Below, in pieces: positions 1 through 23,668 of a DNA stretch of 38,244 nucleotides. The notes beneath the pieces were generated by a model. That model had not been told where the DNA came from, searched no databases, and worked only from the letters and a program-made list of their open reading frames with translations. A program made the position numbers and the translations under genes. How positions within the stretch are numbered: position 1 is the stretch's first letter; each line of letters opens with the position of its first letter. Source of the stretch: Macrostomum lignano (taxonomy: Eukaryota); NCBI GenBank assembly GCA_002269645.1, contig NIVC01004683.1, positions 1-38,244 on the forward strand, in the 5' to 3' direction.

Positions 1-1628
1 ATGGCTGATTCCGTAGATCCGTTGATGCGGCTTGTCGACGATGATTTCAAAGCACTGGTAACGATGCTCTTCAGCTGGAGCAGTTGCTCTCGCTGCTTCC
101 CGGTGGCATGGTGCTTGACGGAGTCGGGACAGGAGTTGAGTACTCCAGCTCACATGTCACCGGTTGCGCGATATGAACGATGAAGAAAATCAAAAGAAAT
201 AGTTTAAATCTGCTGAAAACTCTAACAGAGTTTGTCAAAGGTGGCTTCACCATCTTCTAATCCGAGTCTTGACAGCAGAATCTCTTTCACTGCTTTGAGA
301 GTTTACGCTTTTATGACAAAGATTTCTTTACCTTGACCCATTCAATATCAGCTAAAATTGGACTGCCTAAAGGTAGATGCTTGAATGAAGCGAAGAATCT
401 AAATAATATAGACTTTATTGTGCTCTGGCCAGATGCAGAAAGTTGTTGCAGTATAAATCTCAAAATTCTTCTTATTGTCCAGTCCACCTAATTTGCCTAT
501 CTTGAGTGTCTCAGACCTCGACTGGGCCTGGCTGGCAGCGCAGCGACAAAAGAAGCACGTTAAAGCAGAGCAATGTGCAGAGCTGCTCAACTTTTCCGGC
601 CCACTCCCCCTTATTTACATTTACGCCCCACTGCGCCTGCATACCTGCAATTGTTGCTAGTTTGAAGCAACCTCGTTAATCTAAGCATGCTGCTTGTTGT
701 TTCGCCGACAACTTAAAAAACGAATATTTTACTACTAGTAGCGTATATAAAATACATTTTCATTGTCTTTTGGATCGTGGGAAAGAATCACTGTAGAACG
801 ATGGTTTCGCAGGGAAGTGACTTCGAATGAATTCAATATTGCTGAGTATTTGGCTGCCTATCCTTAACTCTTCTTAACTGTCGTGCGATTTACACCCATA
901 AAGACACCCTACAGCCCTCCTCGAACATGATTACTAGCCTAAAGCTTCTGTCCTTACGTTTGTGGAGTCGTGGATTCGTGTGGATTCTTGTGGAGAACGT
1001 GTGAATTCTACCTCGTCAGTCAGGACAGCCTACCTGATCTCTGAAAGAATCTGCGGCGTTGCTTGCAGGGTTGCCCTTCACTCTATGAGAGCGGTCCTGC
1101 AGTCTGAGGCGCTACCAAACCACCAGAGGGGCTGGTCCAGACCGTCTTGTTTTGCAACAACGATGAGATTTTGGGCCGACGGACGTCGATCTTTGGGCAT
1201 AGAAGTCACGGCAAGTCACACCGGGCTGGTCCATCTAATCGACCTTTTCAAGCTATATCAACTGCTTCTAGTCCTCCTAAAGTCTAAAATTTGAACTTCA
1301 ATTCAAACATAGATTCTTTCTGTAGAATTAAATTGTCTGCATCAGAAAATCAATTCCAATCCAGTCCTATCCAAGAATTAACCACATAAAGAGACAATCC
1401 GGTGTGGAGCATGTACATGTAGATAAACACAGACTTCTTCAACACGACTACACTACTGCAGTTAAGTAGCAACATGAGATTGTTTATGACTGCGTGTTTC
1501 TCATACTAGACATATACAATAGAGTCTATAAAAGCTTGAGCAGTCAAAAGCCTCCGCTCTCAGCTCAACACCAGGCAATAGCAGTTCAATTTTTCCTCTC
1601 GAAAAAATCCGCTTGTTTCCAAACGATA

Positions 1629-4600
1629 ATGGGCTCTGGTAGCTCAGTAAATTCCCAGGTAAGAAGCTTATGAAGCACGTCTAAGTACCATTCTTTTACA
1701 ATAGTCAAGATGTATTAAAGGTATAATGCTATTTGAGGATCGTTATTACAGGCATATTGCCGTTTGAGGATCGTTAGTACAGGCACAATCCCGCTTGAGG
1801 ATCGTTAGTACAGGCACAATCCCGCTTGAGGATCGTTAGTACAGGTACAATGCCGCTTGATAATCGTTAGCACAGGTACAATGCCGCTTGAGGATCGTTA
1901 GTACAGGTACAATGCCGCTTGAGGATCGTTAGCACAGGTAAAATGCCGCTTGAGGATCGTTAGCACAGGTACAATGCCGCTTGAGGATCGTTAGCACAGT
2001 TACAATGCCGCTTGAGGATCGTTAGTACAGGTACAATGCCGCTTGAGGATCGTTAGAACAGGTACAATGCCGCTTGAGGATCGTTAGTACAGGTACAATG
2101 ACGCTTGAGGGTCGACTGACGAAGCTCTTTTTAGAACGTATCATTCTTTCGCTTTGAATCTTAAACTTTATTCTTAGGCAAAATCTGACACGGTTGATGA
2201 GTCAGCAGCCTTGCAGCGACTCGCTAAGCTTGTCATTCAAGGCGACTTTGGACAAGTGCGACAGCTGGCGATGCGCCGGTTAGTAAAGTCAAAAGATGGA
2301 AGTGGACGCACCGTTTTGATGCTAGTGGCTGACACTCGTGGAACTCCTTTGCAAGCTGAAAAGTGCATCTTGTACTTGTTTGAGCTCGGCGCGGATCCTA
2401 AAGCATCTGACGCAGAGGGCAACACGGCTGCTCACCTGGCAGCCCGCCGGGACCACGTGCGAGTGCTGGCGCTGCTGCCTTTCGAGGCGAAGTGGCTGCA
2501 GAACGAGCGGGGACGCACTCCGCTGATGGAGGCGGTGCTTTTTGGCAGCTGGAAATGCGCCAAGCACCTGCTGCACCTGCTGAGGCAGGAGAGGTTCATA
2601 GACGAGTACAGAGGCGTCAGTACAGCACGACAACTAGGCAGGTTTCTAAAGGCCAGCTACACTGGCGATATGAGTCGAAACCCGATGAGGCAGAAGTTTT
2701 TTGGAATGAAGGACCAAAATGGTCAGACGGCGCTGGAGCTGGCGAAATTCAAGGGCTACTCAGAGCTGGCCAGCTATATAGAACGGTGAGTGAGTCTGGT
2801 GTGTAATCTGCCCTGCTTTACTTTCTGGCTTTACAGAATATCATTCTCAAGAATAGCTGGTTTTGTCAATACGAGCGTATAACACGAGATTTTTTGGATT
2901 TTTTCTGCAGCGAGATGCGTCTGGATGTGGTCGCGATTGGGTTAATCAACGGTCTGACGAAGCAGGTAAGCCTCGTTCGCTGGTGCGTGTCTCTTATTTA
3001 CCATGTGGCAATGCATCTACTACTTAAGGGATCGGCAAACTTTTTTACCTCAAGGAAGGGCCAGATAAAGAACCTAGCTGCGGTCTAGATGAGAGAGGAA
3101 ATGAGATAATAGATGAGGGAGAAGATGGGGAGAGAGGAGAAAAGAGAGTTGAGAAGAAACCTCCTGATCTACTTAACGTCGATTTCCTGTTAACTAATCG
3201 CTGCAGGAAGAGGCCGACAGAGAGAAGCTGGAGTGCCTGGCCCGGGAGGGCAACGTGGCGACGCTGCTGCGGCTGGTGACGCGCGCCAACTGCGATCTGC
3301 CTAGCAGAGCCGGTCACACCATGCTGATGCATCTAGTTCGGAGTGTCGAAATTGAAAACGCGTCCGTTTGGAAGCAGCTGCTGAACCTGGCTGACCCAAC
3401 CTGCGCCGATATAAATGCCAACACCTGTGTGCATCACGCAGCCGAGGCAGGAAACGACTCGGCGATTGTCGCACTGCTAAATGCAGGAGCCGCCGCCAAT
3501 GCCACAAAGGACAACGGCGAGACTCCCCTGATCGCGGCAGCCTCCAACACGCCCATTCGAAGAGCCTTCTTGACAGGGTGGTTCCTGTTGGCTGGAGGCG
3601 CCGATTGGAGTCTGAAAGACTCCCGTGGCTGCACTGCCTATGAAATTGCCCTCGAATATGATAAGGAGGATCTGACCGACTTACTGCAACCGTGAGTTTA
3701 CATTTACCGCTCTTTATGGGCAAGTAATTTGCTCTGAAGGTGTTTCTACGAGCGTAAGTTGCCCTTGACTTCACTTGCTGATCGAAGTGACACGGGAAGA
3801 TATTAATATAACAATCAAGTTCAATATAGCTCGCATGACCTGCAACATCGAAAAGTCGCCATCACAGAAGATTCCGTCTGTGGTCGCTACTTTCGAAAGC
3901 GCTGGTAAAGTTTCTCAATCTTTGCGAGTGACGCAACTCAGCTACGCCACGGCAGACTTGAGTTGAGGAATGAAGTGGGGGGAAGCGGTGTGCGAGGGTT
4001 GGACGGATTAAAGCTACCCGAGTGGCGACGTTGCTATGTTGCTGAGTATATTTTAGGACTTTCGGATGTTTTAGTACATTTCCCATCGAAAAAAGGTTAT
4101 CAAAGAGTTGATTTTGTACTTGGCTCATATTGTCCAACTGCAAAACTGCTTGACACAATCTAACCGTGGATCAGTAACAATTACCTTTTCGCTTGCCTGT
4201 TTCAGGTACCAATCGAAAAAATTCTTTGACGAGACTCCGAATCTGTCGTAAGTGTTGATTGAGATTTGTCTTGTACTTATAGCTCGTACTAGTAATTTTA
4301 AGTATAGGCGGATTGTTTAGAACAATGCTCTCATCCTTGTAGATGGAAAACGCGGCGAGGAGCTCAGACAGACGACATCTGGGACGAAGATGAGAGCTGG
4401 CAAGTCATACTACTGCAGATTGAGAGTTGGACCAGTGAAGGACACTCTGGTTTTATAGATTTATGCGACCTATTTCTAGATTCAGAAAGCTAAAAATTGA
4501 TAAAAAGCAACAGGTTAACGAGTATAGTTAGTACTTGAATTTAATCTGATTTAATCAATTTCAGGTCGCCTGAAAGAGCGGAATTTCCGGAAGTTCAGCC

Positions 4601-6167
4601 GTCAACAGGCTCTCAAAGCGGTGCTACGACCAGACAGACGAACTGGTAAGCCACGAGGTCTCGCTTGCTTGCTTAAATGTACTATTGAGATTTTTTATTT
4701 GAGACATCGTCCGAGACTATAAATAAGGTCTAAGTTAGGCTTAGTGTTCTTTTATTGGCTTAAAAAGACTGAATCTGAGGAAGTCCATAGACCCGAGGAA
4801 GGCCAATGATCTAATGAAGTCCATAGATCTGAGGCTATGGAAGCCCATAGACCTGAGAGGAAGCCCATAGATCTGAGGAAGCCCATAGACCTGAGAGGAA
4901 GCCCATAGACTATAAACTTTTAAATCTGTGAAAGCAGCTTTTCTCGTGAATAAATTATATGAACCCGCGAAATTATTTTAACTTTTTATAAAAACTATTA
5001 GGTAAATAAATAATAAAATATAGAAAAATATATAAGGCTGGAGAGAATTTCTCGGGTTTGGTAATATATAATTCAGTTTCAATCGCTATGCCCAATTCCA
5101 GGAGCGAAGAGGAGTTCTACCCAGTTACGAATCCGCAGGGATTCTGCATCATCATCAACATTGGCAAATACGAAGAGTTAAAGCACAAGGAGGGAGGCAC
5201 AGCCATCATCGATCCAGAGATACGTGAAGGATCGGCGAAGGATGTGCAGCTAGTGAGACAAGTATTCGAGGAGCTTTGTTTCATTGTCAAAGTTCGGGAA
5301 GACCTCAAAACTCAGGAGATCGACGACTATCTCAATGACGTAAAGAGATCAGAGGAGCTCAACAAGCACGGCAGTTTTGTCTGCTTTTTAATGGCTCACG
5401 GCAGCCACGACTGCATCTACGGAGCCGATTGGGTTCCTTATCCCATCGATAGGATCGTTGATAAATTTCAGGTAATTTAAAAATGCAGATTTTTATTGAC
5501 AAAAACTACGATAATTAGTCTATCAGTCTTATTGTCGTCAATGGTAATTATTTGTATTATACTGAGTATCTGGGTGGTCTTAAGCGGGTTGAGGGACGCT
5601 ACACAATCGCAAAAAATGTGTAATTTGTTACTCTAGGGAAAAATCTGCAAACTAATTTTCACGAATTCGCTGTTTCAGTCCTACTTCTGCCAGGCTCTGT
5701 CCAGGAAACCGAAAATCTTCTTCATTCAAGCCTGCCGCACCAACACTTTAGCCGCCGCACGCTCCACCATTCGCTCCGACCGAGTCCCAGCCATGGGACA
5801 AGGCCAGACTCGCTCCACTCAAGAAGCTGGAGAGTCCAGCGTGACCTTCGATGCAGCCGCACTTGCTCCCCTGAGAAACCGAGACTTATGTCCGGCCGAA
5901 GGCGACTTTCTGCGCTGCTTCGCCAGCACACCGGGCTCCGTCGCCATAAGAGACACCCACAGGGGCTCGCCATTTGTGCAGATTCTTTGCCGCTTCCTGC
6001 AGCAGCACTACAAGGTGCACGACGTGTCGCACATCATGACCAAAGTGAACAACTTTCTGCAGAAGAATTCTGTTGAGACCGGCGATGGCAAGTTGCAGTC
6101 TATTGTGACGCAGAAGGTGGACCAGCTGGCACGCCGGGTCAGCTTTGATCCCAGCAGGGCCAACTAG
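1629..6167 (+). CDS. Ankyrin-repeat-caspase fusion protein, copy 1 (predicted N-myristoylated; about 8 ANK repeats + C14A caspase p20/p10), 738 aa, 9 exons
   Basis: Manual splice model: 1629-1658 (MGSGSSVNSQ, donor gtaaga), 2178-2785, 2911-2965, 3207-3691, 4206-4247, 4343-4399 (GC donor), 4565-4645, 5102-5471, 5679-6167. All phases are compatible; total 2217 nt = 739 codons. ANK motifs: GRTVLMLVA, GNTAAHLAA, GRTPLMEAV, GQTALELA, GHTMLMHLV, ANTCVHHAA, GETPLIAAA, GCTAYEIA. Caspase motifs: PQGFCIIIN, REGSAKDV, FLMAHG (His codon 5397-5399), KPKIFFIQACRT (Cys codon 5733-5735), EGDFLRCFASTPGSVAIRDTHRGSPFVQ. Exon 1 and the linker exons are the least certain parts. Confidence 0.85.
1735..2111. repeat. 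31-bp minisatellite, about 12 copies, in intron 1 of ANK-caspase copy 1
   Basis: Unit gaggatcgttagtacaggtacaatgccgctt; gaggat recurs at 1735, 1766, 1797 and on to about 2107. Confidence 0.95.
4774..4910. repeat. Short 18-20-bp tandem repeat, about 7 copies, intronic
   Basis: Unit approximately ctgag(ag)gaagcccatagac/at. Confidence 0.85.
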
Positions 6168-6360: not shown

Positions 6361-6366
6361 ATTAAA
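6361..6366 (+). terminator. Possible polyadenylation signal (ATTAAA) of ANK-caspase copy 1
   Basis: ATTAAA about 195 nt after the TAG at 6165-6167, followed by a T/GT-rich stretch. Confidence 0.35.
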
Positions 6367-7467: not shown

Positions 7468-8110
7468 AGGAGAGGAGAGATGAGGAGAGGAGAGAGGAGG
7501 AGAGGAGAGAGGAGGAGAGGAGAGAGGAGGAGGAGAGAGGAGGAGAGGAGAGAGGAGGAGAGGAGAGAGGAGGAGAGGAGAGAGGAGGAGAGGAGAGAGG
7601 AGGAGAGGAGAGAGGAGGAGAGGAGAGAGGAGGAGAGGAGAGAGGAGGAGAGGAGAGAGGAGGAGAGGAGAGAGGAGGAGAGGAGAGAGGAGGAGAGGAG
7701 AGAGGAGGAGAGGAGAGGAGAGGAGAGGTGAGTTGATGAGAGGAGAGAGGAGAAAAGAGGAGAGGAGAGAGAAGGAGAGGAGAGCAGAGCAGAGGAGATG
7801 AGAGAGGAGGAGAGGAGAGAGGAGGAGAGGAGAGAGGAGGAGAGGAGAGAGGAGGAGAGGAGAGAGGAGGAGAGGAGAGAGGAGGAGAGGAGAGAGGAGG
7901 AGAGGAGAGAGGAGGAGAGGAGAGGAGAGGAGAGGTGAGTTGATGAGAGGAGAGAGGAGAAAAGAGGAGAGGAGAGAGAAGGAGAGGAGAGCAGAGCAGA
8001 GGAGATGAGAGAGGAGGAGAGGAGAGAGGAGGAGAGGAGAGAGGAGGAGAGGAGAGAGGAGGAGAGGAGAGAGGAGGAACGGAGAGGAGAGAAAGGAAGA
8101 GGGGAGAGGA
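7468..8110. repeat. Purine-rich (GGAGA/GAGGA) repeat, 15-bp unit, with an internal 207-bp duplication
   Basis: Unit ggagaggagagagga. The interrupting motif gtgagttgatgag occurs at 7728 and 7935. Confidence 0.95.
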
Positions 8111-8600
8111 GATTCGACTAGGGAGCTGCAAAAAGACACAAACCTCGAGCAGGCCGGATTGCAATGCTATTGTGAAGTTTTAAAGGACCAGAGAGCCAGA
8201 CAAAGCTTACTTAACAACAAGAAGGTTAAGTAGTCCTTGGAGCCGGATAGAGAGGCTTCGCGGGCCGCATGTGGGCCGCGGGACGATGTTTGCTGTCCCC
8301 TATCTTAAAAGACAAATAAAAGTGCATTTATGACGCATTGCAAAATTGTACAATTTAATTCTCTATCCCCTACTTACGTCAGTAGCAAAAAAGCTGGTGC
8401 ACGAAAAAAGAAATGACAAGTAGTGTACTTTTAGAATAGAGTAAGAGATGATAGGATAAAGTAACCCCCATTGTCATGGCAACCTGCACAAGCATACAAA
8501 ATCAGTCACTGGGGCAGGTGCGCTAGTGGAGCGGATTCTTATTTTGCTCAACACTTGTGCAAGCCAGGTCAGCAAAAAGATTTGACAGGTCCATGGCTAG

Positions 8601-9168
8601 CTGACTGACTGACTGACTGACTGACTGACTGACTGACTGACTGACTGACTGACTGATTGACTGACTGACTGACTGACTGACTGACTGACTGACTGACTGA
8701 CTGACTGATTGACTGACTGACTGACTGACTGACTGACTGACTGACTGACTGACTGACTGACTGACTGACTGACTGACTGATTGACTGACTGACTGACTGA
8801 CTGATTGACTGACTGACTGACTGACTGACTGACTGATTGACTGACTGACTGACTGACTGACTGACTGACTGACTGACTGACTGACTGACTGACTGACTGA
8901 CTGACTGACTGACTGACTGACTGACTGACTAACTGACTGACCGACTGACTGACTGACTGACTGACTGACTGACTGACTGACCGACCGACTGACTGACTGA
9001 CTGACTGACTGACTGACTGACTGACTGACTGACTGACTGACTGACTGACTGACTGACTGACTCACTCACTCACTCACTGACTGACTGATTGACTGACTGA
9101 CTGACTGACTCATTCACTCACTGACTGACGGACTGACTCATTCACTCACTGACTCACTGACTCACTGA
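8601..9168. repeat. (CTGA)n tetranucleotide microsatellite, about 570 bp
   Basis: Near-perfect ctga array with ttga/ccga variants, decaying to ctca at the 3' end. Lies in putative intron 1 of copy 2. Confidence 0.98.
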
Positions 9169-9715
9169 ATTCCTATATACAGTAATATATTCGCATCAGA
9201 AAATTATTTAAACTTTCCAATTCTGCAGGAATTCACTCAGCTCGAGTGCGATTTAGAGAAAATTCGGGCCAGGTTCGAGTCCGACCGGTATTATGCAGGC
9301 AAACTGATGACAGCAACAGACATGGATTATCGAAACCCAGTGATGTAGCTCGCATGGGCTAAAAAGATCCCTGCTAACGTTGAAAAGTGCATCGCGTACG
9401 TTGACGAGCATGAGAAAAACGCACTGACCTCGGTGTCACCTGGTCAGTCAGGAGGGGCAACCTGAAGGTGCTGGCGTTGCTGTATGTCGGAGTAAAGTGC
9501 TGTCAGAATAAGCGAAGCGCCACCCCGCTGATGGAAGCGGTATGGAGGGACTGGAAATCGGTCCTCCTTCACGAAAGAAGATGCCTGGCATGAAAAATAT
9601 CAAAGGTCGTACAGCCTTTGAACTGGCGAGGCTTAATGGACACTCGGAGATGGCGAAAAATATTGAGCTGTGAGTGGCCGGTGTGACGATTTATGTAGCT
9701 CCCGTATTAAAACAC

Positions 9716-9910
9716 GGGGTTGTAGCTAAAGCCTAGTGGCTGGAGCGTGGAATTCACGATTGAGAAGTCTGGAGTTCGATTCTCGAGCTACTCAGAAAAA
9801 TTTTTGTCCTTTAGCAAGACATTTAACTCTACATTGCCTCAGTTCACCCAGCTGTAAAATGGGTTCCAGCATTAGCTGGTGTAATTAAGGGGTGCGTGTG
9901 GCGACCCCTC
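9716..9910 (+). mobile_element. tRNA-derived SINE with CORE-like central domain, copy A
   Basis: tRNA-like head with A-box-like sequence and B-box ggagttcgattc (9771-9782). Then ttagcaagacatttaactctacattgcctcagttcacccagctgtaaaatggg, similar to the CORE domain (gggcaagtcacttaacctct...cctcagtttc...ctgtaaaatggg). A close second copy lies at 12798. Confidence 0.75.
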
Positions 9911-10270
9911 AAATTATTGCTTCGACAGTCATTAAAACTTTTGCTTGACTTGTCAACATTTTTTCCGATCTCGAATCAAGATGGGATTAAAAGTATTTGT
10001 AAGTAGTCAGAAAGAGTGCCGGCATGACTCAAATTTCGAAATAATTTTAGAGAGATGCGTCTGCAGATCAGCAAAGAAAGCAAAATTAGCGGCCTAACGG
10101 TCGAGGTGAGTTGTTATCTCCGTACTCATATTGCGAACAGCTGGGAACTTTTCCCTCAAAAAGTTAGCACAAAAATCACCCCTTTCCCAACAGCAGAACG
10201 TTTGACGAGAAGGGCCGAACGGCCGTCATGTGGGCGGCCAGCAACCGCGACTGCAACGACGCGACTCTCT

Positions 10271-12633
10271 TGGAAGCAGCTGCTGCAGTTGACCGACCCA
10301 ACTTGCGCCGACACCAGCAGCAAAAGCTGCTTGCACTACGCCGCAGACGGCGGCAACTTTGCCGCGGCTACAGCTCTTCTAGCAGCCGGAGCATGCGTGA
10401 ATGCCATCGCTGAAGGCTTAACGCCTTTATCGAATCTAGCCAAGAATGCGCCAGATGACGCTGAAACGGTTGGGTTCGCTTGGCTCCTGTTGTTGGCTGG
10501 TTCGGATTGGAGCTTGACCAGCTGGGATGGAAAGACGGCGCTCGAATTGGCCATTGACAGGACAAACAGCGGCCTGGTTGAGCTGCTGTCCCAGTGAGTT
10601 CAGCTTCAACCGCAGCTTGGGTCACTTTTTGGGGGAGGGGGGGGGTTGTCTCGCATCAAAGCTCCCAGGTCACATTAAGTTTGGACTTATGCACAAATTG
10701 TGGGTTGTCGTACGATCCTCGCCAACTTTTAAGGTAGAGAATATGTGCATGTATGTGCAATAATAGAGTCAGGGTCGCTGTACAACCTAAGAGTGTTTGC
10801 CTGCGTCCGTGTAATGAACGATGACCAGGCTTGCCTCCTACTTGCTTCAAACTTACGACGGCTCATATAGTTTTTTCCAGATACGAAGGCAAAAATACTT
10901 TGAAGTCACATCAAATAAGTCGTAAGAGGATCTTTTATAAATGCACTTCTACCTGATCGGAATTTTAGGAGCTGCAGAACTCTACTGCATAAATTAATTT
11001 CAGAGATCATTCAGGGACTAACAACGCGGCTATTAAAAAGCCCAATGAGTCTTCTAAAAGAACCACTTGTGTTGGAAGTGTTGCAGCAAAGCTTAGCGGC
11101 ACTACACGGTCCACTAGCCAATCTTCTGGTAATTATTCGACCCGAAGAACACAGGTTGACGATGTGGATGAGCTATCAAATGACGAGGAACAGGAAAATT
11201 AGTATGTTTTTTACACAAATTTTGAAGAAGTCTCGTATTTTTCGTCTTTAAAAAGTTAATAAAATTTGGCCAATATTGTTTGAGCAGCCGGAGTACTTCG
11301 TACGCAAAACCTCGGGAGACGGACATTAACAATCCTGGGAGTTACGAGAGTCCAGACCTGTATCCACAAGGTGCCACCGGAGTCTCTCGAAAAAGAGGAG
11401 GACCGTCAATATGGTAATCTCAGAAGCTTCTCTCTGAAACTCTCTGAGTGTTCACTGAATGATTTCTTTCGTACTCGTATTTTAGGCTAGACGAGGACTA
11501 CTACAAAGTGACCAATCCTCAAGGATTCTGCATCATTGTCAACATCAACAAGTACACGGCTACTAGCGATATCACAGTCAGCCACGAGGATCGCGAAGGT
11601 TCCCAGCGGGATGTAGATCGAGTGACCGAACTCTTTGGGAAGCTCCAATTCCGCGTCAAAAAGCAGGAGGACCTCACTGCCGAGGAGATCGACGACTTTC
11701 TCAGCGAGGTGAAGCGATCGAAAGAGCTGGCCAGACACGGCAGCTTTGTTTGCTTTTTTATGGCTCACGGCAGCCACGACTGCATATACGGCAGCGACGG
11801 CGTCCCGTATGAGATCCGTAAACTTACCGAGAGGTTTCAGGTTAGCATTGAACATTCTGTCTGAACTCCTTGTTATTAGCAATTGGAAGAATGATCTTGC
11901 CCGACATTTGAGCACGCAGCCAAACCCAGAATTCCACACAGCTGGTGCACATATACATCGTCTCTTTCATCGACGGACCTCTCGGCTGATGACGGTACAT
12001 GTACAGTGTTCTACATACTCTATCACATTGGTGGTATGAGTCAAAGAAGCTTCCACTTGCTGAGATGCCGTTGAATTTACTTTTTCTCTGGTCTGCTTTT
12101 GCAAAAACATGTTTTGTTCAAGAAATCTTAGCCTATGCTCAACCATACCTTCTCAGGCCTCCGTCTGCAAAAGTCTGGCTGGGAAGCCAAAGATTTTCTT
12201 CATCCAGGCCTGCCGCGGCAACAGAATCGGTAGTCGGAGCTCAAGAATGAAAACTGACAAGCTTTCTGCGCCAGCCTGCCGAAATGCTGCATCGGCAGTC
12301 GAATACTCCACTATGAGAACTGATGAGCCGCCAGCCCCAGTGCTCGACCCGGCCATCCACCCCGCCGAAGGAGACTTCCTGCTCTGCTTCGCCAACACCC
12401 CGGGCTCAGTGGCGTTCCGAGACACCGCCGAAGGCTCCGTATTTGTGCAGACTCTGTGCAGTTATATTGAAACAGATTTCAAGCGGCACGATCTCGGCTA
12501 CATCATGACCAAGGTGAACCGGCACCTGCAGAAGGAGCCAGTCCAGATCGATAACAAACTGTACCACGTCGTACCGCAGAAGGTTGACCAGCTCGCGCAT
12601 AAAGTCAGTCTCGATCCCAGGAGGGCTTTTTAG
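10271..12633 (+). CDS. ANK-caspase copy 2, intact 3' portion (about 3 complete ANK repeats + linker + caspase with QACRG)
   Basis: Open segments 10271-10593, 11004-11201, 11288-11413, 11486-11840, 12157-12633, with canonical AG/GT sites and consistent phases. Motifs: SCLHYAADGGN, GLTPLSNLA, GKTALELA; PQGFCIIVN, REGSQRDV, FFMAHG (His codon 11766-11768), KPKIFFIQACRG (QACRG 12205-12219), EGDFLLCFANTPGSVAFRDTAEGSVFVQ. The real start is uncertain because the 5' exons are damaged. Confidence 0.8.
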
Positions 12634-12990: not shown

Positions 12991-13786
12991 GTGCTTGGAC
13001 TGAACAGCCGTACGCAACCTTCAGATGCGCCGCTCAATAGCTGTCGGTTGCTCATCCGCCTATTTGGGCAAATGTAATTAAATAATGTTTTAATTTTAAT
13101 TTTAATAATTATACCTTAAACCTTTTAGCCCCTATAAAACTCTAACAAATGCCTCGTATTCCCTGGTTTTAAATTTTGCAACGCACCGTACAATGTATAC
13201 AATATGTTTGCCTCTAATATAAATGTATTAGCGATACCAAATCCCGCGAATTTACTGATGGAACGGCAAATTTTGTTTGGGATTTGTTCCCTAATTCTGT
13301 TCTCAATCTATCAAGCGCTGAGGCAAGATCTACCGCTATTATACAGCGTTGAGTAAATTAAACCTGACAGAGATGTATTCCTTGGTCCCATTCCTTGGCT
13401 ACAACCCACACCCACACATGGGAGTTCTCGGGTTCGCTAACGCTTTCTATCTCAAATTCCATCCTGCATCAGAAAGCCCTGGCGTGCTCACAATCAGAAT
13501 CAAATATATTGCTCTGACGGCAATATTGATGGAGATGATGGATATTGGGATAACAATGGCTCTATTGCCTAGTTAAGAATTTACACCATCAACTGCAGGC
13601 TGCCTAACTAAGGCTATTGCATGAGTGCACACCGGCCACTAGGGTAAACCGAACCATGCTCTGCATCTGCTCTAACATTATATCCAGTTGCGTACACAGC
13701 AACTTTAACTGGAGAAGTGGCAACATTAATTGGGGTACCAATATTTGGTTTCTTAGTTTGCGCATCTATCTCGTACTTGTAGTTTG

Positions 13787-14636
13787 GTGCCCCTGTCTCT
13801 TGGTGTGGGTGCACTGTCTCTTGGTGTGGGTGCACTGTCTCTTGGTGGGTGTCCCTGTCTCTTGGTGTGGGTGTCCCTGTCTCTTGGTGGGTGTCCCTGT
13901 CTCTTGGTGTGGGTGTCCCTGTCTCTTGGTGGGTGCCCCTGTCTCTTGGTGGGTGCCCCTGTCTCTTGGTGTGGGTGCCCTCTATCTCTTGGTGGGTGCC
14001 CTTATCTCTTGGTGGGTGCCCCTGTCTCTTGGTGTGGGTGCACTGTCTCTTGGTGGGTGTCCCTGTCTCTTGGTGTGGGTGCACTGTCTCTTGGTGTGGG
14101 TGCACTGTCTCTTGGTGGGTGTCCCTGTCTCTTGGTGTGGGTGTCCCTGTCTCTTGGTGGGTGTCCCTGTCTCTTGGTGTGGGTGTCCCTGTCTCTTGGT
14201 GGGTGCCCCTGTCTCTTGGTGGGTGCCCCTGTCTCTTGGTGTGGGTGCCCTCTATCTCTTGGTGGGTGCCCTTATCTCTTGGTGGGTGCCCCTGTCTCTT
14301 GGTGTGGGTGCACTGTCTCTTGGTGGGTGTCCCTGTCTCTTGGTGTGGGTGCACTGTCTCTTGGTGTGGGTGCACTGTCTCTTGGTGGGTGTCCCTGTCT
14401 CTTGGTGTGGGTGTCCCTGTCTCTTGGTGGGTGTCCCTGTCTCTTGGTGTGGGTGTCCCTGTCTCTTGGTGGGTGCCCCTGTCTCTTGGTGGGTGCCCCT
14501 GTCTCTTGGTGTGGGTGCCCTCTATCTCTTGGTGGGTGCCCTTATCTCTTGGTGGGTGCCCCTGTCTCTTGGTGTGGGTGCACTGTCTCTTGGTGGGTGC
14601 CCCTGTCTCTTGGTGTGGGCGCACTGTGGGTGCACT
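13787..14636. repeat. GT-rich 20/22-bp minisatellite with a 270-bp higher-order repeat (x3)
   Basis: Units gtctcttggt(gt)gggtg(c/t)(a/c)ct. The diagnostic variant tctatctctt occurs at 13981, 14251 and 14521. Confidence 0.95.
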
Positions 14637-14649
14637 GATAGGGAGACAC

Positions 14650-14995
14650 TCTCCCTATCTGCCTCTCTCCCTCCCCGTCTCTCTATTTCTATCTGCCCGC
14701 CTCTCTACATGTATCTCTCCCTCCCGCCTCTCAACTCTCCCTCCCGCCTCTCTATCTCCCCCTCCCCGCCTCTCAACTCTCCCTCCCGCCTCTCTATCTC
14801 CCCTCCCGCCTCTCTATCTCTCCCTCCCGCCTCTCTATCTCCCCCTCCCGCCTCTCTATCTCTCCTTTTCCGCCTCTCTATCTCCCCCTCCCGCCTCTCT
14901 ATCTCTCCCTTTCCGCCTCTCTTATCTCCCCCTCCCCGCCTCTCTATCTCTCCCTGCCCGCTTCGATCTCTCCCCCTCCCGCCTCTCTATCTCTC
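14650..14995. repeat. Pyrimidine-rich degenerate ~20-bp minisatellite
   Basis: Recurring ctcccgcctctctatct(c)cc. Confidence 0.9.
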
Positions 14996-15690
14996 CTAGC
15001 TCTCTTCAGTTTCGGGTAAGGGTTAATATCGAAGTTTTTATAAGATACTCTCGTAGTATTATACGCTCGTAATGATGTAAAATTTCGAGTTTATTAAATT
15101 GCTCCCTACTCGTGGATAGAGAAATTTTATTTGACTGCTTTTGTTTTGATTTTTTCAATTCAACATTTTTTAAGTTAGGTTAAGCAGTAACGTCAGTAAT
15201 CCAAAACAATATCTTAAACGAGCAAAATCGTGTTTGTCCGAGAATGCGGGTTTTCTTGAGAATTTACACACTTCGGGGGGCCGTCATTATGGGGGCGCGG
15301 GTCTGAATGTACAGTCTATATCGTCTCTATAACCCCTCCCCACTGGGTCGGGTCCGTTAGCCCGCCTCCCCCTGCCACAGCGTACACTCGCGCACAAGCT
15401 GTCTCAGTGTACATTGGAGACAAGAAAGAGAGAGAGAGTTTTTATTACTGAACTTCCAAACCCAGAGGGCTGGGTGACCCCCTTTTCCAACTATTTATTA
15501 GTCGTTTTCAAGCGCAGCGTTCCTCCAGGCAATTACTATTTAGTTCCCTCTTCCCAATATTAAGCCCCAGCTCACACAGGTAAATGACGCTTAGATTACG
15601 AAAATAAGAAAGGAGATAACGTCAAAGAAGAGCAGAAGATCACAGCGCGCAGAGCAGGAGACGCAACAGCTGTTGCCTTTGCCTTGCTGC

Positions 15691-15813: not shown

Positions 15814-18800
15814 ATGAGCAGTGCAACTATTAAAAGTCAACAATCTGTATTGGAGCAGTCGCTTCCATCGATTGAACTGCTAGCATATGCTGCATGGTTT
15901 GTCATCGTGCTGGCTAGCGTGGGCCATGCTTTCAAGACTCAGATTATTCCTGAAAGCCGTGAGTAGCTATTTCTATTTTAGCTCTGAATCCTGTTGATTC
16001 ATGCTCCGTTCCTAGATCCCCAGTTGCTGGGCCAGCCTCCCAGATCCCCAGTTACTGGGCCAGCCTCCCAGATCCCCAGTTACTGGGCCAGCCTCCCAGA
16101 TCCCCAGTTGCTGGGCTGCCAGCCTCCCAGATCCCCAGTTACTGCGCTGCCAGCCTCCCAGATCCCCAGTTGCTGGGCCAGCCTCCCAGATCCCCAGTTG
16201 CTGGGCTACAGCACTCAAGATCACTGCAAGACCCGGAGACCGTATCACCTTCCAGTTCTTCGCCTGGACGCGGCAGGTCTGACTGACGGTATGTTCGGAT
16301 ACAAAATGGTATGAAAATCAAATTCGTCATAATTTGTTCTTAAGACCGTTTTTTTAAAGCACGACTTCAATCGATTAAATCGCGCGCAATTATTGCAGGA
16401 CAACACCTTTATTGACTGGAATCTCTACCTGAGTATGTTCGCGCCCATGCTGGCCCTGCTCGCCTTGCACCTGCTAATTAGCAGATTAACGATGCGCTAC
16501 TGCAACGCCCAGGTACGAAAAGGGTCAAATAAGGTCATTTCAGTCGAAAGAAAAACGCAATTTAGGTTTATTTTACTGAAATACTGTGATATTTCGGGTT
16601 TATGATATTTCGGGTTTATGATATTTCGGGTTTATGATATTTCGGGTTTGTGTGATATTTCGGGTTTATGATATTTCGGGTTTATGATATTTCGGGTTTG
16701 TGTGATATTTCAGGTTTATGATATTTCGGGTTTATGATATTTCGGGTTTGTGTGATATTTCGGGTTTATGATATTTCGGGTTTATGATATTTCAGGTTTT
16801 TGTGATATTTCGGGTTTGTGATATTTCAGGTTTGTGATATTTCGGGTTTGTGATATTTCAGGCTTGTGATATTTCGGGTTTGTGATTTTTCGGATGTGTG
16901 ATACTTAGGGTTTGTGATATTTCGGGTTTGTGATCTTTCAGGTTTGTGTGATATTTCGGGTTAGTGAAATTTCAGGTTTGTGATTTTTCAGATGTGTGAT
17001 ATTTCGGGTTTGTGTGATATTTCGGGTTTGCGATATTTCGGGTTTGTGTGAAATTTCAGGTTTGTGATATTTCGGGTTTGTGTGATATTTCGGGTTTGTG
17101 ATATTTCGGGTTTGTGTGATATTTCGGGTTTGCGATATTTCGGGTTTGTGTGATATTTCGGGTTTGTGATATTTCGGGTTTGTGTGATATTTCGAGTTTG
17201 TGATATTTCGGGTTTGTGTGATATTTCGGTTGTGTGATATTTCGGGTTTGTGTGATATTTCGAGTTTGTGATGTTTCGGGTTTGTGTGATGTTTCGGGTT
17301 TGTGATTTTTCGGGTTTGTGATTTTTCGGATGTGTGATACTTAGGGTTTGTGATATTTCGGGTTTGTGATCTTTCGGGTTTGTGATTTTTCAGATGTGTG
17401 ATATTTCGGGTTTTTGTTATATTTCGGGTTTGTGATCTTTCAGGTTTGTGTGATATTTCGGGTTAGTGAAATTTCGGGTTTGTGATTTTTCAGATGTGTG
17501 ATATTTCGGGTTTGTGTGATATTTCGGGTTTGCGATATTTCGGGTTTGTGTGAAATTTCGGGTTTGTGATATTTCGGGTTTGTGTGATATTTCGGGTTTG
17601 TGATATTTCGGGTTTGTGTGATATTTCGGGTTTGCGATATTTCGGGTTTGTGTGATATTTCGGGTTTGTGATATTTCGGGTTTGTGTGATATTTCGAGTT
17701 TGTGATATTTCGGGTTTGTGTGATATTTCGGTTGTGTGATATTTCGGGTTTGTGTGATATTTCGAGTTTGTGATGTTTCGGGTTTGTGTGATGTTTCGGG
17801 TTTGTATGATATTTCGGATTTGTGATATTTCGGGTTTGTGATATTTCGGGTTTGTGATAAATCGGGTTTGTGATGTTTCGGGTTTGTGAGATATTTTAGG
17901 TTTGTGATGTTTCGGGTTTGTGTGATATTTCGGGTTTGTGATTTTTCGGGTTTGTGATATTTCGGGTTTGTGTGATATTTCGGGTTTGTGATGGCGACCC
18001 GTATTCACTGCACATTCAATTTCTCCACTACTTTTTTTTCGCTCAGGTGCACAGCTTACTGTCGGCAATTTTCACCTTATTTGTCAGCTGTCAGGTGCTG
18101 TCAGCTCGCTGTACACTGCTGTATCTCTGCCTGCACCTCATCTGTATTACGACAGCCTCTCTGCTCGGCCACCTGGCTGTCTGGCTGTCCATCGGCCTGG
18201 CGTTCTGGCAGTTCAGCGGTGCCGCATTTGGCGACAACCATCAGCTGAGATCGGCACTCCAGCTGGACTCGAGAGGCGCTCACCTGTACTACCCCGTCAC
18301 TGGCTACCTGTACTGCAGATTCCTGTCAATGGGACTGTGCCTGGCTGCCAGTCCCGCTTTCCTGTCTGACAGCAACCCTGTCAGACGGATAGTCAGATAC
18401 TTACCGTTGTCTCTGCACTATGCATTCTATCTGCCTAACTTCCTCGGCGCCCCGGTGGTCACTATGGATGAGTTTCTGCGGCAGAAACAGGCCCCGAACC
18501 CCGCCGCTGTCCCAGTCCGCCAGATTTTATCTCGTCTGTTGCGCCTGTGCTTCTGGTTGGCATTTACCGTGTTCGTGCTGCACTGCTTTCATGCTGGAGC
18601 CTACCTGGAGACTCTGGGGATTAGACAGGTGAACTGGTGGTGTATTTTGCAGATCTGGTGCATCTCCATTGATTCCCAGTTTATCATGTTCTTGTTTTCC
18701 AGGGGAATCCCACAAGAATCCCGATCTTAGATCCCCACAAGAATCCCGATCTTAGATCCCCACAAGAATCCCGATCTTAGATCCCCACAAGAATCCCGAT

Positions 18801-21662: not shown

Positions 21663-21738
21663 GACTATGGTTTGTTACAATTGCTTTTGTAACATCTACT
21701 AGATGCTAGATGCTTGAACAAAGACTTCACATATCTGA

Positions 21739-22350
21739 TGATCCAGAACAAATACTATAAATAGCTGAGAATCCAGAACAGACTATAAATAGCTGAGGAT
21801 CCAGAACAAAGACTATAAATAGCTGAGGATCCAGAACAAAGACTATAAATAGCTGAGGATCCAGAACAAAGACTATAAAAAGCTGAGAATCCAGACCAGA
21901 CTATAAATAGCTGAGGATCCAGAACAAAGACTACGAGTATAAATAGCTGAGAATCCAGAACAGACTATAAATAGCTGAGGATCCAGAACAAAGACTATAA
22001 ATAGCTGAAGATCCAGAACAAAGACTATAAAAAGCTGAGAATCCAGACCAGACTATAAATAGCTGAGGATCCAGAACAAAGACTACGAGTATAAATAGCT
22101 GAGAATCCAGAACAGACTTTAAATAGCTGAGGATCCAGAACAAAGACTATAATTAGCTGAGAATCCAGAACAAACTATAAATAGCTGAGGATCCAGAACA
22201 AAGACTTTAAATATGAATAGCTGGGGATCCAGAATAAATACTATAAATAGCTGAGCATCCAGGACAAAGGCTGTAAGTAGCCGAGGATTCAAAACATAGA
22301 CTATACATAGCTGAGGATCCAGAACAGACTATAAATATTCTAGCTGGGGA
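21739..22350. repeat. ~30-bp minisatellite, about 20 copies, downstream of HHAT
   Basis: Unit gatccagaacaaagactataaatagctgag, with 28-37-bp variants. Confidence 0.95.
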
Positions 22351-22709
22351 TTTCAGAACAAAGATTTAGTGCAGTACGTTAGCAGTTTACACAAAATTTT
22401 ACCCTGACTTGCATGTTATAATTTCATTTAGTCTAATTATATTTAAACTTTCTTCCTATCAACATATTGACTGCAACTGCATCCTGCACTGCATGTGAGC
22501 AAAATTTTCTGGTTGAAAAATTGTCTTTTGCAATTACTTCCTCGAATAAAGTACATTGTAAGCATAACTGTTTGTATGAGTATATTTAATTTCGATATAA
22601 TTCGCGTGAATGCTGGCGTGAATTTTGCTAGTTTAATGACATCGAGACACTGTAATTGACAAAATGACCATAGAAAAAAGTATTGAATTATACAAAAGCA
22701 AAGTGCTTT

Positions 22710-23668
22710 CATGACTTCTAGGGATCAGGGGTCATGACCTCATGATTCTAGGGATCAGGGGTCATGACCTCATGATTCTAGTGATCGGGGGTCATGACCT
22801 CATGATTCTTGGGATTAGGGGTCATGACCTCATGATTCTAGTGATCGGGGGTCATGACCTCATGATTCTTGGGATTAGGGGTCATGACCTCATGATTCTA
22901 GTGATCGGGGGTCATGACCTCATGATTCTAGGGATTAGGGGTCATGACCTCATGATTCTAGGGATCAGGGGTCATGACCTCATGATTTTAGGGATCAGGG
23001 GTCATGACCTCATGATTCTAGTGATCGGGGGTCATGACCTCATGATTCTAGGGATTAGGGGTCATGACCTCATGATTCTAGTGATCGGGGGTCATGATCT
23101 CATGATTCTAGGGATCGGGGGTCATAACCTCATGATTCTAGGGATCAGGGGTCATGACCTCATGATTTTAGGGATCAGGGGTCATGACTTCATGATTCTA
23201 GGGATCAGGGGTCATGACCTCATGATTCTAGTGATCGGGGGTCATGACCTCATGATTCTAAAGATTAGGGGTCATGACCTCATGATTCTAGTGATCGGGG
23301 GTCATGATCTCATGATTCTAGGGATCGGGGGTCATGATCTCATGATTCTAGTGATCAGGGGTCATGATCTCATGATTCTAGGGATCGGGGGTCATGACTT
23401 TATGATTCTAGGGATTAGGGTCATGACCTCATGATTCTAGGGATTAGGGTCATGACCTCATGATTCTAGGGATTAGGGGTCATGACCTCATGATTCTAGG
23501 GATCGGGGGTCATGACCTCATGATTCTAGGGATCGGGGGTCATGACCTCATGATTTTAGGGATTAGGGGTCATGACCTCATGATTCTAGGGATCAGGGGT
23601 CATGACCTCATGATTCTAGGGATCAGGGGTCATGACCTCATGATTCTAGGGATCAGGGGTCATGACCC
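22710..23668. repeat. 30-bp minisatellite, about 32 copies, each with a palindromic GGTCATGACC core
   Basis: Unit gggatcaggggtcatgacctcatgattcta; successive 60-nt lines show the exact 30-bp phase. Confidence 0.97.

What the first reader, a model, noticed from the sequence alone, without database searches (positions are those of the whole stretch)
1629..6167. Ankyrin-repeat prodomain caspase: an unusual initiator-like architecture
The ORF track shows ANK fragments and caspase fragments separately. The apparent stops at 2787 and 3693 overlap gtgagt donors, and all intervening exons join in phase, giving one 738-aa protein: about 8 ANK repeats in two blocks, an S/T/D/E-rich linker, then p20 and p10. 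Established: well-characterised metazoan initiator caspases use CARD or DED prodomains. I do not know of a characterised ANK-prodomain caspase pathway, but I cannot search for one. The S1-pocket residues appear retained (Arg in REGSAKD, Gln of QAC, Arg in VAIR), so Asp specificity is expected. Candidate intersubunit cleavage sites are IRSD and VTFD. Inference: the ANK array is a ligand or pathogen sensor that triggers proximity activation.
Basis: partly seen in the sequence, partly recalled or inferred. Interest (0 to 1): 0.88.

Follow-up and report, generated by a model that had tools for sequence, protein, structure and literature searches.

The report
Flatworm caspase with ankyrin-repeat prodomain
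The window holds a real nine-exon gene of the free-living flatworm Macrostomum lignano for a cell-death protease (caspase) with a long ankyrin-repeat front end; this kind was named in 2024 but reported only from parasitic flatworms, so the gene is a new member of a known but untested class.

Summary
Nine exons (1629-6167, + strand) join in frame into a 738-aa protein. It has a ~390-aa ankyrin (ANK) solenoid, a disordered ~50-aa linker, and a caspase domain with all catalytic and S1 residues kept. The model is identical to GenBank BOX15_Mlig009377g1 (Macrostomum lignano, contig NIVC01004683.1), whose annotation came from RNA-seq assemblies. One intron (6) uses a GC donor.

The novelty claim is only partly right. 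"ANK caspases" were first noted in Schistosoma (2014) and named as a platyhelminth clade in 2024 (PMC11463336). They remain functionally untested. That paper says free-living flatworms lack them, and this gene and at least five paralogue clusters in M. lignano contradict that.

New here:
- The same ANK module, with the same exon structure including a 42-nt microexon, is fused to Ser/Thr kinases, to kinase+caspase and to SH3 in this species.
- The M. lignano long-prodomain caspases (ANK, ANK-kinase, Ras/Roc, LRAT) form one clade.
- Three of four complete ANK-caspase N-termini carry an MGxxxS myristoylation motif.
- A decayed, unannotated tandem copy lies at 9.4-12.6 kb.

The "pathogen sensor" idea has no support. 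A conserved recruitment module is more likely. Orthology with the parasite ANK caspases could not be tested.

The parts
1527..1534 (+). TATAAAAG, candidate TATA box about 36 nt upstream of the annotated transcript start (1563)
   Evidence: The annotated gene starts at 1563.
1563..1628 (+). 5' UTR of the annotated transcript. It contains no ATG. GenBank translates it as 22 extra residues because the frame is open, hence the 'partial' label.
1629..1658 (+). Exon 1: start codon in the context ATAATGG, encoding MGSGSSVNSQ, which carries the MGxxxS N-myristoylation consensus
1719..2114 (+). 31-bp tandem repeat x12.8 inside intron 1 (non-coding)
2178..2785 (+). Exon 2: aa 11-213, the first half of the ANK module. 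It includes a gene-specific ~20-aa insertion with low pLDDT (about aa 150-178).
2911..2965 (+). Exon 3 (55 nt): EMRLDVVAIGLINGLTKQ, the connector between the two ANK halves. It is conserved in the paralogues.
3207..3691 (+). Exon 4: aa 232-393, the second half of the ANK module
4206..4247 (+). Exon 5: 42-nt microexon YQSKKFFDETPNLS. It is the last piece of the shared ANK module. The same 42-nt exon is present in ANK-caspase paralogue P0002 and in ANK-kinase P0009.
4343..4399 (+). Exon 6: acidic linker (…TDDIWDEDESW), followed by the non-canonical GC donor GCAAGT at 4400
   Evidence: The junction is the same as in the GenBank CDS.
4565..4645 (+). Exon 7: Ser/Thr/Pro-rich linker, predicted disordered
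5102..5471 (+). Exon 8: caspase large subunit (p20) part, with R494 (5223-5225) and H552 (5397-5399)
5679..6167 (+). Exon 9: QACRT active site (Q593 5727-5729, C595 5733-5735), the intersubunit linker with D610 and D634, p10 with R667 (5949-5951), and the stop codon at 6165-6167
6361..6366 (+). ATTAAA, candidate poly(A) signal 194 nt after the stop codon
   Evidence: It is a sequence match only.
9444..12633 (+). Unannotated tandem paralogue. The ANK part is decayed (frame changes, stops, deletions). The p20 exon (11486-11840) and p10 exon (12157-12633, QACRG) are intact, with the same intron phases as in the main gene.
   Evidence: No database protein matches it at 70% identity or more.

Best explanation
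Shown: the locus is a single, transcribed, nine-exon gene of Macrostomum lignano (BOX15_Mlig009377g1). It encodes a caspase zymogen that looks catalytically competent and Asp-specific. Its prodomain is a ~390-aa ankyrin-repeat solenoid joined to the protease by a ~50-aa disordered acidic/Ser-Thr linker.

Shown: it belongs to a Macrostomum-lineage clade of caspases that lack a death-fold prodomain and instead carry other modules (ANK, ANK+kinase, Ras/Roc GTPase, LRAT). Its ANK module, down to a 42-nt microexon, is also the N-terminal module of a large set of Ser/Thr kinase genes in the same species. This points to exon shuffling at the intron after the microexon.

Inferred: the ANK module acts as a recruitment or oligomerisation domain, the role CARD and DED play elsewhere. 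The MGSGSS N-terminus is myristoylated and holds the zymogen at a membrane. Binding of an unknown ANK partner brings protease domains together. They then autoprocess at Asp residues in the long intersubunit linker (D610, D634), and possibly in the acidic prodomain linker, which would release the active protease.
For: Gene model and transcript support:
- The nine exons join in frame.
- The model is 100% identical to the GenBank CDS.
- That annotation derives from genome-guided RNA-seq assemblies (StringTie/TACO/TBONE; PMC5730564).

Domains, residues and fold:
- Pfam finds both domains.
- The catalytic and S1 residues are kept.
- AF2 gives the ANK solenoid pLDDT >90, with disordered segments at 408-456 and 597-650 and a caspase fold.
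- Foldseek matches DARPin/AnkB/tankyrase for the N-terminus and caspase-7/-3/-8/CED-3 (TM 0.74-0.81) for the C-terminus.

Conservation of the architecture:
- The same architecture occurs in independent paralogous loci (P0002-P0006, P0020, the P0130 cluster, P0140).
- Intron positions are conserved in P0002.

Shared module:
- The ANK module is 50-55% identical to those of the ANK-kinases.
- The ANK-kinase gene P0009 has the same exon 4 and 42-nt exon 5 structure.
- ANK+kinase+caspase (P0187), Ras+caspase (P0132) and LRAT+caspase (P0143, P0154) exist in the same species.

Clade:
- The M. lignano caspases form one clade, with 81% of 200 NJ bootstraps on 143 taxa and 60% on 34 taxa.
- A family profile scores members at 257 bits or more and all other caspases at 202 bits or less.

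Myristoylation motif:
- MGxxxS is present in three of the four ANK-caspases with a complete N-terminus, and in none of about 10 ANK-kinases.
Against: - No functional data exist for any ANK caspase.
- Position 597 is Thr where 126 of 143 caspases have Gly, which could weaken activity.
- Paralogue P0002 has lost the catalytic Cys (QAGRG) and the tandem neighbour is decaying, so some family members are not proteases.
- The closest solved structures by sequence are the effector caspases-3/-7.
- The placement relative to initiators and effectors is unresolved.
- Myristoylation, membrane binding, the ANK partner and the cleavage sites are all predictions.
- I did not see RNA reads myself. Transcript support is indirect, through the published annotation method.
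Confidence: 0.62

Rival explanations
1. One reading: the ANK array is itself a sensor of a ligand or pathogen molecule, and binding triggers proximity activation of the caspase.
For: - The family is expanded, tandemly duplicated and sheds pseudogenes, as many immune gene families do.
- ANK arrays can bind diverse proteins.
- This gene has a private ~20-aa insertion in the first ANK half.
Against: - The module is strongly conserved across paralogues that carry different effector domains. Long identical stretches include RTVLMLVAD, DTAAHLAARRD, TPLMEAA, WKCAKHLLHLLRQ and CDLPD. It is about as conserved as the protease domain.
- No hypervariable surface was seen, although I ran no formal dN/dS or surface-mapping test.
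- No expression or infection data are available.
Confidence: 0.15
2. It is an effector-type caspase. The ANK region is a localisation or auto-inhibitory prodomain, and activation comes from cleavage by an upstream caspase (for example the CARD caspase-2 homologue with APAF-1 that flatworms retain), not from ANK-driven dimerisation.
For: - The best sequence matches among solved structures are caspase-3/-7 (E ~4e-27).
- Asp sites are present both in the intersubunit linker and in the prodomain linker (QTDD, DEDE).
- Platyhelminths keep a CARD caspase and APAF-1 (PMC11463336).
Against: - The published tree places platyhelminth ANK caspases, and the M. lignano kinase-prodomain caspase, next to the DED initiators.
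- Many of the nearest named database hits are caspase-8-like DED caspases.
- Very long prodomains are typical of initiators.
Confidence: 0.2
3. The protein is a weak or inactive protease that acts mainly as a scaffold or decoy, or the gene is drifting towards pseudogenisation.
For: - It has QACRT instead of QACRG.
- Paralogue P0002/P0124 has QAGRG.
- The neighbouring tandem copy is decayed in its ANK part.
- The genome is recently duplicated and redundant (PMC5730564).
Against: - The full 738-codon frame is intact across nine exons.
- Every catalytic and S1 residue is kept.
- Thr at position 597 occurs in 8 of the 143 caspase domains compared.
- The gene is in the RNA-derived annotation.
Confidence: 0.1
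4. The model is an annotation artefact: an ANK gene and a separate caspase gene have been joined wrongly.
For: - The three linker exons are short (42, 57 and 81 nt) and one uses a GC donor.
- An in-frame ATG at 5088 in AT-rich intron 7 could start a caspase-only product.
- An older gene prediction (P0133) skips exons 5-6.
Against: - The same ANK-linker-caspase arrangement, with conserved intron positions, occurs in a paralogue at 45% identity on another contig and in several further clusters.
- The GenBank CDS comes from assembled RNA-seq.
- All phases match with no stop codon.
Confidence: 0.04

Closest known systems
ANK caspases of parasitic Platyhelminthes (Horkan et al. 2024, Genome Biol Evol, PMC11463336; first noted in Schistosoma by Lee et al. 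2014)
   Same: - An N-terminal ankyrin-repeat prodomain on a C14A caspase.
- Found in a flatworm that apparently lacks a DED caspase.
- No CARD or DED prodomain.
- Function untested.
   Different: - The clade was reported as restricted to parasitic flatworms, with free-living ones said to lack it. This gene is from a free-living macrostomid.
- I could not retrieve any parasite ANK caspase, so common origin versus convergence is untested.
- Here the family is multi-copy, and its ANK module is shared with kinases.
M. lignano 'protein-kinase prodomain caspase' (BOX15_Mlig018903g1-3, P0187 cluster), placed as sister to the ANK caspases in PMC11463336
   Same: - Same species and the same caspase clade.
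- Its N-terminus carries a homologous ANK module (phmmer E 4e-49; Pfam).
   Different: - It has a Ser/Thr kinase domain between the ANK module and the caspase.
- Its caspase domain is encoded in one exon, whereas here an intron splits it after the p20 part.
- Its caspase domain is only ~35% identical to this one.
DED initiator caspases (caspase-8/-10 and invertebrate caspase-8-like)
   Same: - A long non-catalytic prodomain followed by a linker and p20/p10.
- Many of the nearest named database neighbours are DED caspases.
- The literature places flatworm ANK caspases as sister to them.
   Different: - There is no death-fold domain (Pfam).
- The pentapeptide is QACRT rather than QACQG.
- The relationship is not resolved in my trees.
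Effector caspases-3/-7
   Same: - They are the best sequence matches among solved structures.
- The fold match has TM 0.76-0.81.
- The same S1 triad is present, and an Asp lies about 12-15 residues after the catalytic Cys.
   Different: - The prodomain here is 450 aa, against about 25 aa.
- The intersubunit linker is about 54 aa.
- The equivalents of W206 and W214 are Ile and Pro, so the S2-S4 pockets should differ.
Ankyrin-repeat + kinase proteins (the ILK and TNNI3K type architecture; named from my own knowledge, not tested here)
   Same: The M. lignano paralogues P0008-P0016 have N-terminal ANK repeats followed by a protein kinase domain.
   Different: No specific sequence relationship to those families was tested. 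The M. lignano module is species- or lineage-specific. Its nearest outside hits are generic bacterial ANK proteins at about 25% identity.
Prokaryote-like C14 + ANK proteins (e.g. P0116)
   Same: Peptidase_C14 and ANK repeats occur in one polypeptide.
   Different: The order is reversed (C14 at 153-356, ANK at the C-terminus), the C14 match is weak (36 bits), and it is unrelated to the metazoan caspase clade.

Membership tests
Caspase (MEROPS C14A / Pfam PF00656) | Profile match above the curated threshold | tested here: met
   Peptidase_C14 scores 138.6 bits against a cut-off of 21.4, at aa 466-707.
Caspase (MEROPS C14A / Pfam PF00656) | Catalytic His-Cys dyad with the oxyanion Gly (H-G … Q-A-C-x-G) | tested here: met
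   H552, G553, Q593, A594 and C595 are present. The fifth residue of the pentapeptide is T597 instead of G (G in 126 of 143 sequences, T in 8 of 143).
Caspase (MEROPS C14A / Pfam PF00656) | S1 pocket Arg/Gln/Arg, which confers Asp specificity | tested here: met
   R494, Q593 and R667 align with caspase-3 R64, Q161 and R207. These columns are R in 140 of 143, Q in 136 of 143 and R in 138 of 143 sequences.
Caspase (MEROPS C14A / Pfam PF00656) | Caspase-hemoglobinase fold with p20 and p10 | tested here: met
   The AF2 model matches caspase-7/-3/-8/CED-3 in Foldseek with target TM 0.74-0.81.
Caspase (MEROPS C14A / Pfam PF00656) | Proteolytic activity after Asp | not testable with these tools
   This needs recombinant enzyme and substrates.
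Ankyrin-repeat domain | Profile matches above threshold and an α-solenoid fold | tested here: met
   Ank_2 84.1 bits (cut-off 27.3), Ank_5 62.4 and Ank_4 61.1. AF2 pLDDT exceeds 90 over aa ~20-400. Foldseek matches DARPin fusions, AnkB R13-24 and tankyrase ARCs with E down to 1e-17.
ANK caspases sensu Horkan et al. 2024 | ANK prodomain N-terminal to the caspase domain, with no CARD or DED | tested here: met
ANK caspases sensu Horkan et al. 2024 | Membership of the monophyletic clade that contains the neodermatan (Schistosoma etc.) sequences | tested here: inconclusive
   No parasite ANK caspase appeared among the top 150 of 4504 HMMER hits or in the profile search, and the paper's supplements are not held. 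The only link is indirect. The paper puts the M. lignano kinase-prodomain caspase as sister to the ANK caspases, and that protein groups with this gene in my trees (81% and 60%).
ANK caspases sensu Horkan et al. 2024 | Restricted to parasitic flatworms (as described) | tested here: not met
   The source organism is the free-living M. lignano. This is a property of the published description, which this gene contradicts, rather than a structural criterion.
Initiator (apical) caspases | Long protein-interaction prodomain | tested here: met
   About 455 aa precede the protease domain.
Initiator (apical) caspases | Monomeric zymogen activated by induced dimerisation on a platform | not testable with these tools
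   This needs biochemistry. No partner is known.
Initiator (apical) caspases | Phylogenetic affinity to the caspase-8/-9/-2 lineages rather than -3/-6/-7 | tested here: inconclusive
   All deep nodes have under 20% bootstrap. PDB sequence matches favour -3/-7, while the nearest database neighbours include many DED caspases.
N-myristoylated proteins | M-G-x-x-x-S/T at the true N-terminus | tested here: met
   The sequence is MGSGSS. The ATG at 1629 is the first ATG in the annotated transcript, with A at -3 and G at +4. The motif is shared by paralogues P0004 (MGSAAS) and P0006 (MGSWFS). The modification itself was not tested.

The most novel reading that the evidence does not exclude
In Macrostomum the lost death-fold network (no DED caspase or FADD) has been replaced by an ankyrin-based one. 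A single ~390-aa ANK module, moved by exon shuffling onto caspases, Ser/Thr kinases, a kinase-caspase fusion and SH3 proteins, would act as a common recruitment domain. It would assemble kinase and protease effectors on one platform, which is membrane-bound for the myristoylated caspases. In that case ANK caspases arose before the split of macrostomids from the lineage leading to the parasitic flatworms, rather than as an adaptation to parasitism.
Probability: 0.25. Interest if true: 0.7.

Novelty: new member of a known kind. Interest (0 to 1): 0.5.

Why it matters
Flatworms have lost the extrinsic (FADD/DED) death pathway, and what replaced it is unknown. ANK caspases are the leading candidate, but no functional test of one has been published. 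They have also been interpreted as an adaptation to parasitism (PMC11463336).

An intact, transcribed ANK caspase in M. lignano matters for two reasons:
- It shows that a free-living flatworm has this architecture, so the link to parasitism needs re-examination.
- It places the question in an organism where the pathway can be tested directly. M. lignano is a free-living laboratory model with established transgenesis (PMC5730564).

The shared ANK module on kinases and caspases gives a concrete hypothesis for how such a pathway could be wired.

Tried and rejected
1. My first exon boundaries were off by one, and the model broke at exons 5-8. It was fixed by requiring a GTAAGT donor at 4248, a GC donor at 4400 and a donor at 5472.

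2. A word-index homologue search with the caspase domain alone found only 9 proteins, all Macrostomum apart from one contig assembled from a public sequencing run of unknown organism. It was too insensitive to reach other flatworms.

3. I tried to find parasite ANK caspases in three ways: a full HMMER scan, local ANK detection in its top 150 hits, and a family-profile search. None was retrieved. The 2024 paper's supplements are not held. Orthology therefore remains untested.

I scanned 30 selected proteins instead.

5. The NJ phylogeny with named vertebrate and invertebrate caspases left the deep position of the clade unresolved. I make no initiator or effector call from phylogeny.

6. The sister group in the large tree (P0155, P0161, P0173) turned out to be intronless genes from ENA assemblies (the one I looked up is a metagenome assembly) of unknown organism. 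Their N-termini have no Pfam hit, so they gave no taxonomic information.

7. A literature search for the locus tag found nothing.

8. The bacterial promoter/terminator scanner and the RNA tools were not used because they do not apply to a metazoan protein-coding gene.

9. I considered and rejected the idea that the tandem copy is simply mis-assembled. One frameshift lies in an A-run and could be a sequencing error. But the first ANK half shows several frame changes, stops and about 170 nt of missing sequence.

Full report
**Source and gene model**

The window is the whole 38,244-bp contig NIVC01004683.1 of the Macrostomum lignano Mlig_3_7 assembly (GCA_002269645.1). M. lignano is a free-living macrostomid flatworm.

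I assembled the candidate exons by eye and then by script. The nine exons are 1629-1658, 2178-2785, 2911-2965, 3207-3691, 4206-4247, 4343-4399, 4565-4645, 5102-5471 and 5679-6167. They give a 2217-nt CDS and a 738-aa protein with no internal stop.

Seven introns are GT-AG. Exons are GC-richer (0.55) than introns (0.33-0.45).

The protein is identical, residue for residue, to residues 23-760 of GenBank BOX15_Mlig009377g1. The extra 22 residues there are the open 5' UTR from 1563. That stretch has no ATG, so 1629 is the first ATG, with A at -3 and G at +4. A TATAAAAG lies at 1527-1534, about 36 nt upstream of the annotated transcript start.

The GenBank annotation of this assembly was made from genome-guided RNA-seq assemblies (StringTie, TACO and the TBONE boundary pipeline), not ab initio (PMC5730564). 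The identical junctions, including the GC donor, are therefore indirect transcript evidence that the ANK and caspase exons are on one mRNA.

**The protein**

Pfam finds Peptidase_C14 at 466-707 (138.6 bits) and ANK families well above threshold.

AlphaFold2, run with an alignment of 29 paralogues, gives:
- a continuous helical-repeat solenoid over residues ~20-400 at pLDDT >90, with a low-confidence gene-specific insertion at about 145-178
- a disordered segment at 408-456
- a caspase fold
- a disordered 597-650 segment between the large and small subunit parts

Foldseek matches the N-terminus to DARPin fusions, ankyrin-B repeats and tankyrase ARCs. It matches the C-terminus to caspase-7, -3, -8 and CED-3 with target TM-scores of 0.74-0.81.

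Against caspase-3 and against 143 aligned caspase domains, R494, H552, G553, Q593, C595 and R667 are all retained. Asp specificity is therefore the reasonable expectation. The pentapeptide is QACRT, where 126 of 143 sequences have Gly at the last position and 8 have Thr. The equivalents of caspase-3 W206 and W214 are Ile and Pro, so the S2-S4 preferences probably differ from DEVD-type enzymes (inference).

IRSD610 and VTFD634 lie in the disordered intersubunit segment. Paralogues also have Asp residues at comparable positions. QTDD418 and DEDE424 lie in the prodomain linker.

**Family context**

The full-length search returned paralogues in M. lignano with the same ANK + C14 architecture (P0002-P0006 and P0020).

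An exhaustive HMMER scan of 1.84 billion representatives with the caspase domain gave 4504 hits. The best were all M. lignano:
- further ANK caspases (the P0130 cluster with six members, P0140, P0124)
- an ANK + protein kinase + caspase protein (the P0187 cluster, BOX15_Mlig018903g1-3)
- Ras/Roc + caspase (P0132, P0279)
- LRAT + caspase (P0143, P0154)

Domains are, and names.

In a 143-taxon NJ tree these form one clade with 81% bootstrap, and with 60% in a 34-taxon set. Besides M. lignano sequences, the clade includes one short sequence from an unidentified sequencing run (P0129, SRR31628394). A profile of the family scores members at 257 bits or more and every other caspase at 202 bits or less.

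The nearest outsiders are a taxonomically scattered mix of caspase-8-like (DED) and caspase-3-like proteins at about 30-35% identity. The deep position of the clade is unresolved.

**The ANK module is shared with kinases**

The first ~405 residues are 50-55% identical to the N-terminal parts of many M. lignano proteins that continue into a Ser/Thr kinase domain (P0008-P0016 and others), and 40% identical to that of an SH3 protein (P0031).

The shared region ends at a conserved Y-x-G-K-x-Y-F-D-E-P motif. In this gene that motif is exon 5, a 42-nt microexon.

Mapping paralogues onto their own loci shows the same exon pattern in ANK-caspase P0002: large exon, ~55-nt exon, large exon, 42-nt exon, then linker and caspase. 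The ANK-kinase P0009 has the same exon 4 and 42-nt exon, followed by kinase exons. The effector domains are thus attached after the same intron, which is what exon shuffling would produce.

The P0187 protein is evidently the "protein-kinase prodomain caspase" of the 2024 survey. It also carries the homologous ANK module (phmmer E 4e-49; Pfam).

**A membrane anchor?**

The protein starts MGSGSS. Paralogues P0004 and P0006 start MGSAAS and MGSWFS. All three fit the MGxxxS/T N-myristoylation consensus. P0002 starts MSSS, and about ten ANK-kinases start MA…. This is a prediction from sequence only.

**What is already known**

A full-text search found one paper that names this class: Horkan et al. 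2024 (PMC11463336). [quoted passage not shown] It says they were first seen in Schistosoma (Lee et al. 2014), are present in all parasitic flatworms sampled, and are absent from free-living ones (Schmidtea and Dugesia, which keep a DED caspase). One annelid is noted as an exception.

For M. lignano the paper reports only a kinase-prodomain caspase, placed as sister to the ANK caspases, and states that no other unexpected prodomain was detected in platyhelminths. No function has been tested for any member.

The architecture itself is published, and this gene is in the public databases with both domains recognised.

What the present analysis adds:
- A free-living flatworm has several ANK caspases.
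- The "kinase" caspase is itself an ANK-kinase-caspase of the same clade.
- The ANK module is shared with a kinase family.

I could not test whether the Macrostomum and parasite ANK caspases share an origin. None of the parasite sequences surfaced in any search, and the paper's supplements are not held.

**Mechanism**

Shown:
- The gene is intact, is in the RNA-seq-derived annotation, and encodes both domains.
- The catalytic machinery is present.
- The linkers are flexible.
- The clade is lineage-specific with swapped N-terminal modules.

Inferred:
- The ANK solenoid is a recruitment or oligomerisation domain that takes the role of the missing death-fold domains.
- The zymogen is membrane-tethered by myristate.
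- Clustering leads to autoprocessing in the intersubunit linker.

It is disfavoured by the strong conservation of the module across paralogues with different effectors. An effector-type model, with activation by an upstream CARD caspase, remains a serious rival. A decoy or decaying-gene model draws on QACRT here, on QAGRG in P0002, and on the neighbouring pseudogene-like copy.

**Surroundings**

About 3.3 kb downstream on the same strand lies an unannotated tandem paralogue (9444-12633).
- Its p20 and p10 exons are intact, with QACRG and the same intron phases as the main gene.
- Its first ANK half is broken by frame changes, stops and deletions. The second half and the microexon each carry a frameshift, one of them in an A-run.
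- It is the closest relative of the main gene in the trees, with weak support (50%).

The rest of the contig is largely satellite and minisatellite DNA. It also holds fragments of an MBOAT-family gene (18962-19546, + strand) and of a LepA/GUF1-type GTPase (24263-25535, - strand).

**Verdict**

The gene is a new member of a recently named but functionally unexplored class, found in an organism where the class was said to be absent. Interest is moderate. It would rise if the shared ANK module proves to be a death-fold-like recruitment system, or if orthology with the parasite ANK caspases is shown.

Noticed in passing
window 9444-12633 (+): There is an unannotated tandem paralogue of the ANK caspase. 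Its p20 exon (11486-11840) and p10 exon (12157-12633, QACRG) are intact. Its ANK part carries frame changes, stops and deletions. No database protein matches it at 70% identity or more.
   Followed up: partly
window 5088-5101 (intron 7, + strand): An in-frame ATG lies 14 nt upstream of exon 8, in an AT-rich stretch with TATA-like sequences around 4990-5040. A transcript starting in intron 7 would encode a prodomain-less caspase beginning MPNSRSEEEFYPV. There is no expression evidence.
   Followed up: no
P0002/P0124 (M. lignano paralogue; locus L004 10001-15978): The closest full-length ANK-caspase paralogue has QAGRG in place of QACRG, so the catalytic cysteine is lost. It is probably a pseudo-caspase.
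   Followed up: partly
loci L005 (P0009) and L006 (P0187); proteins P0132, P0143, P0154: M. lignano caspases of the same clade carry ANK+kinase, Ras/Roc or LRAT N-terminal domains. A large ANK-kinase family shares the ANK module and its 42-nt microexon. The P0187 caspase domain is encoded in a single exon, unlike the split domain here.
   Followed up: partly
window 1719-2114 and 4773-4910: Introns 1 and 7 contain tandem repeats: a 31-bp unit x12.8 at 92% identity, and ~20-bp units x4-7.
   Followed up: no
window 32854-38243: A 5.4-kb array of a 23-bp satellite (AGAAGCGTCATGTAAACAATCAT, about 237 copies, 91% matches) runs to the contig end. Other long arrays lie at 7468-8112, 8601-9168 ((CTGA)n), 13786-14996, 16585-17992, 19465-21111, 21716-22337, 22709-23667 and 25581-26755. 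About half of the contig is tandem repeat.
   Followed up: no
window ~28089-32150: Repeat features recur at an exact 2741-bp offset (for example (CTAACC)5 at 28089 and at 30830, and identical ORFs at 28899-29411 and 31641-32153). This indicates a ~2.7-kb tandem duplication. (CTAACC)5 is a short run of the TTAGGG-type telomeric repeat at an internal position.
   Followed up: no
window 18962-19546 (+) and 24263-25535 (-): There are ORF fragments with an MBOAT acyltransferase match (56.5 bits) and with LepA_C and EF-G domain III/C matches (a GUF1/LepA-type GTPase). Minisatellites interrupt or flank them. No gene was called in the first 16 kb other than the caspase. I did not look up the annotation of these two regions.
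   Followed up: partly
P0133 (2968 aa, UniRef/MetaClust, older M. lignano gene set): A giant predicted protein contains a 96-100% identical copy of this gene's exons 2, 4, 7 and part of 8. It is fused to unrelated upstream sequence and skips exons 5-6. It is probably a merged gene prediction from the earlier assembly.
   Followed up: partly
P0116 (contig assembled from a public sequencing run, 923 aa): This protein has the reverse arrangement: a weak Peptidase_C14 match at 153-356 followed by a long C-terminal ANK array and a bacterial Ig domain. It is probably prokaryotic and unrelated to the metazoan ANK caspases.
   Followed up: partly
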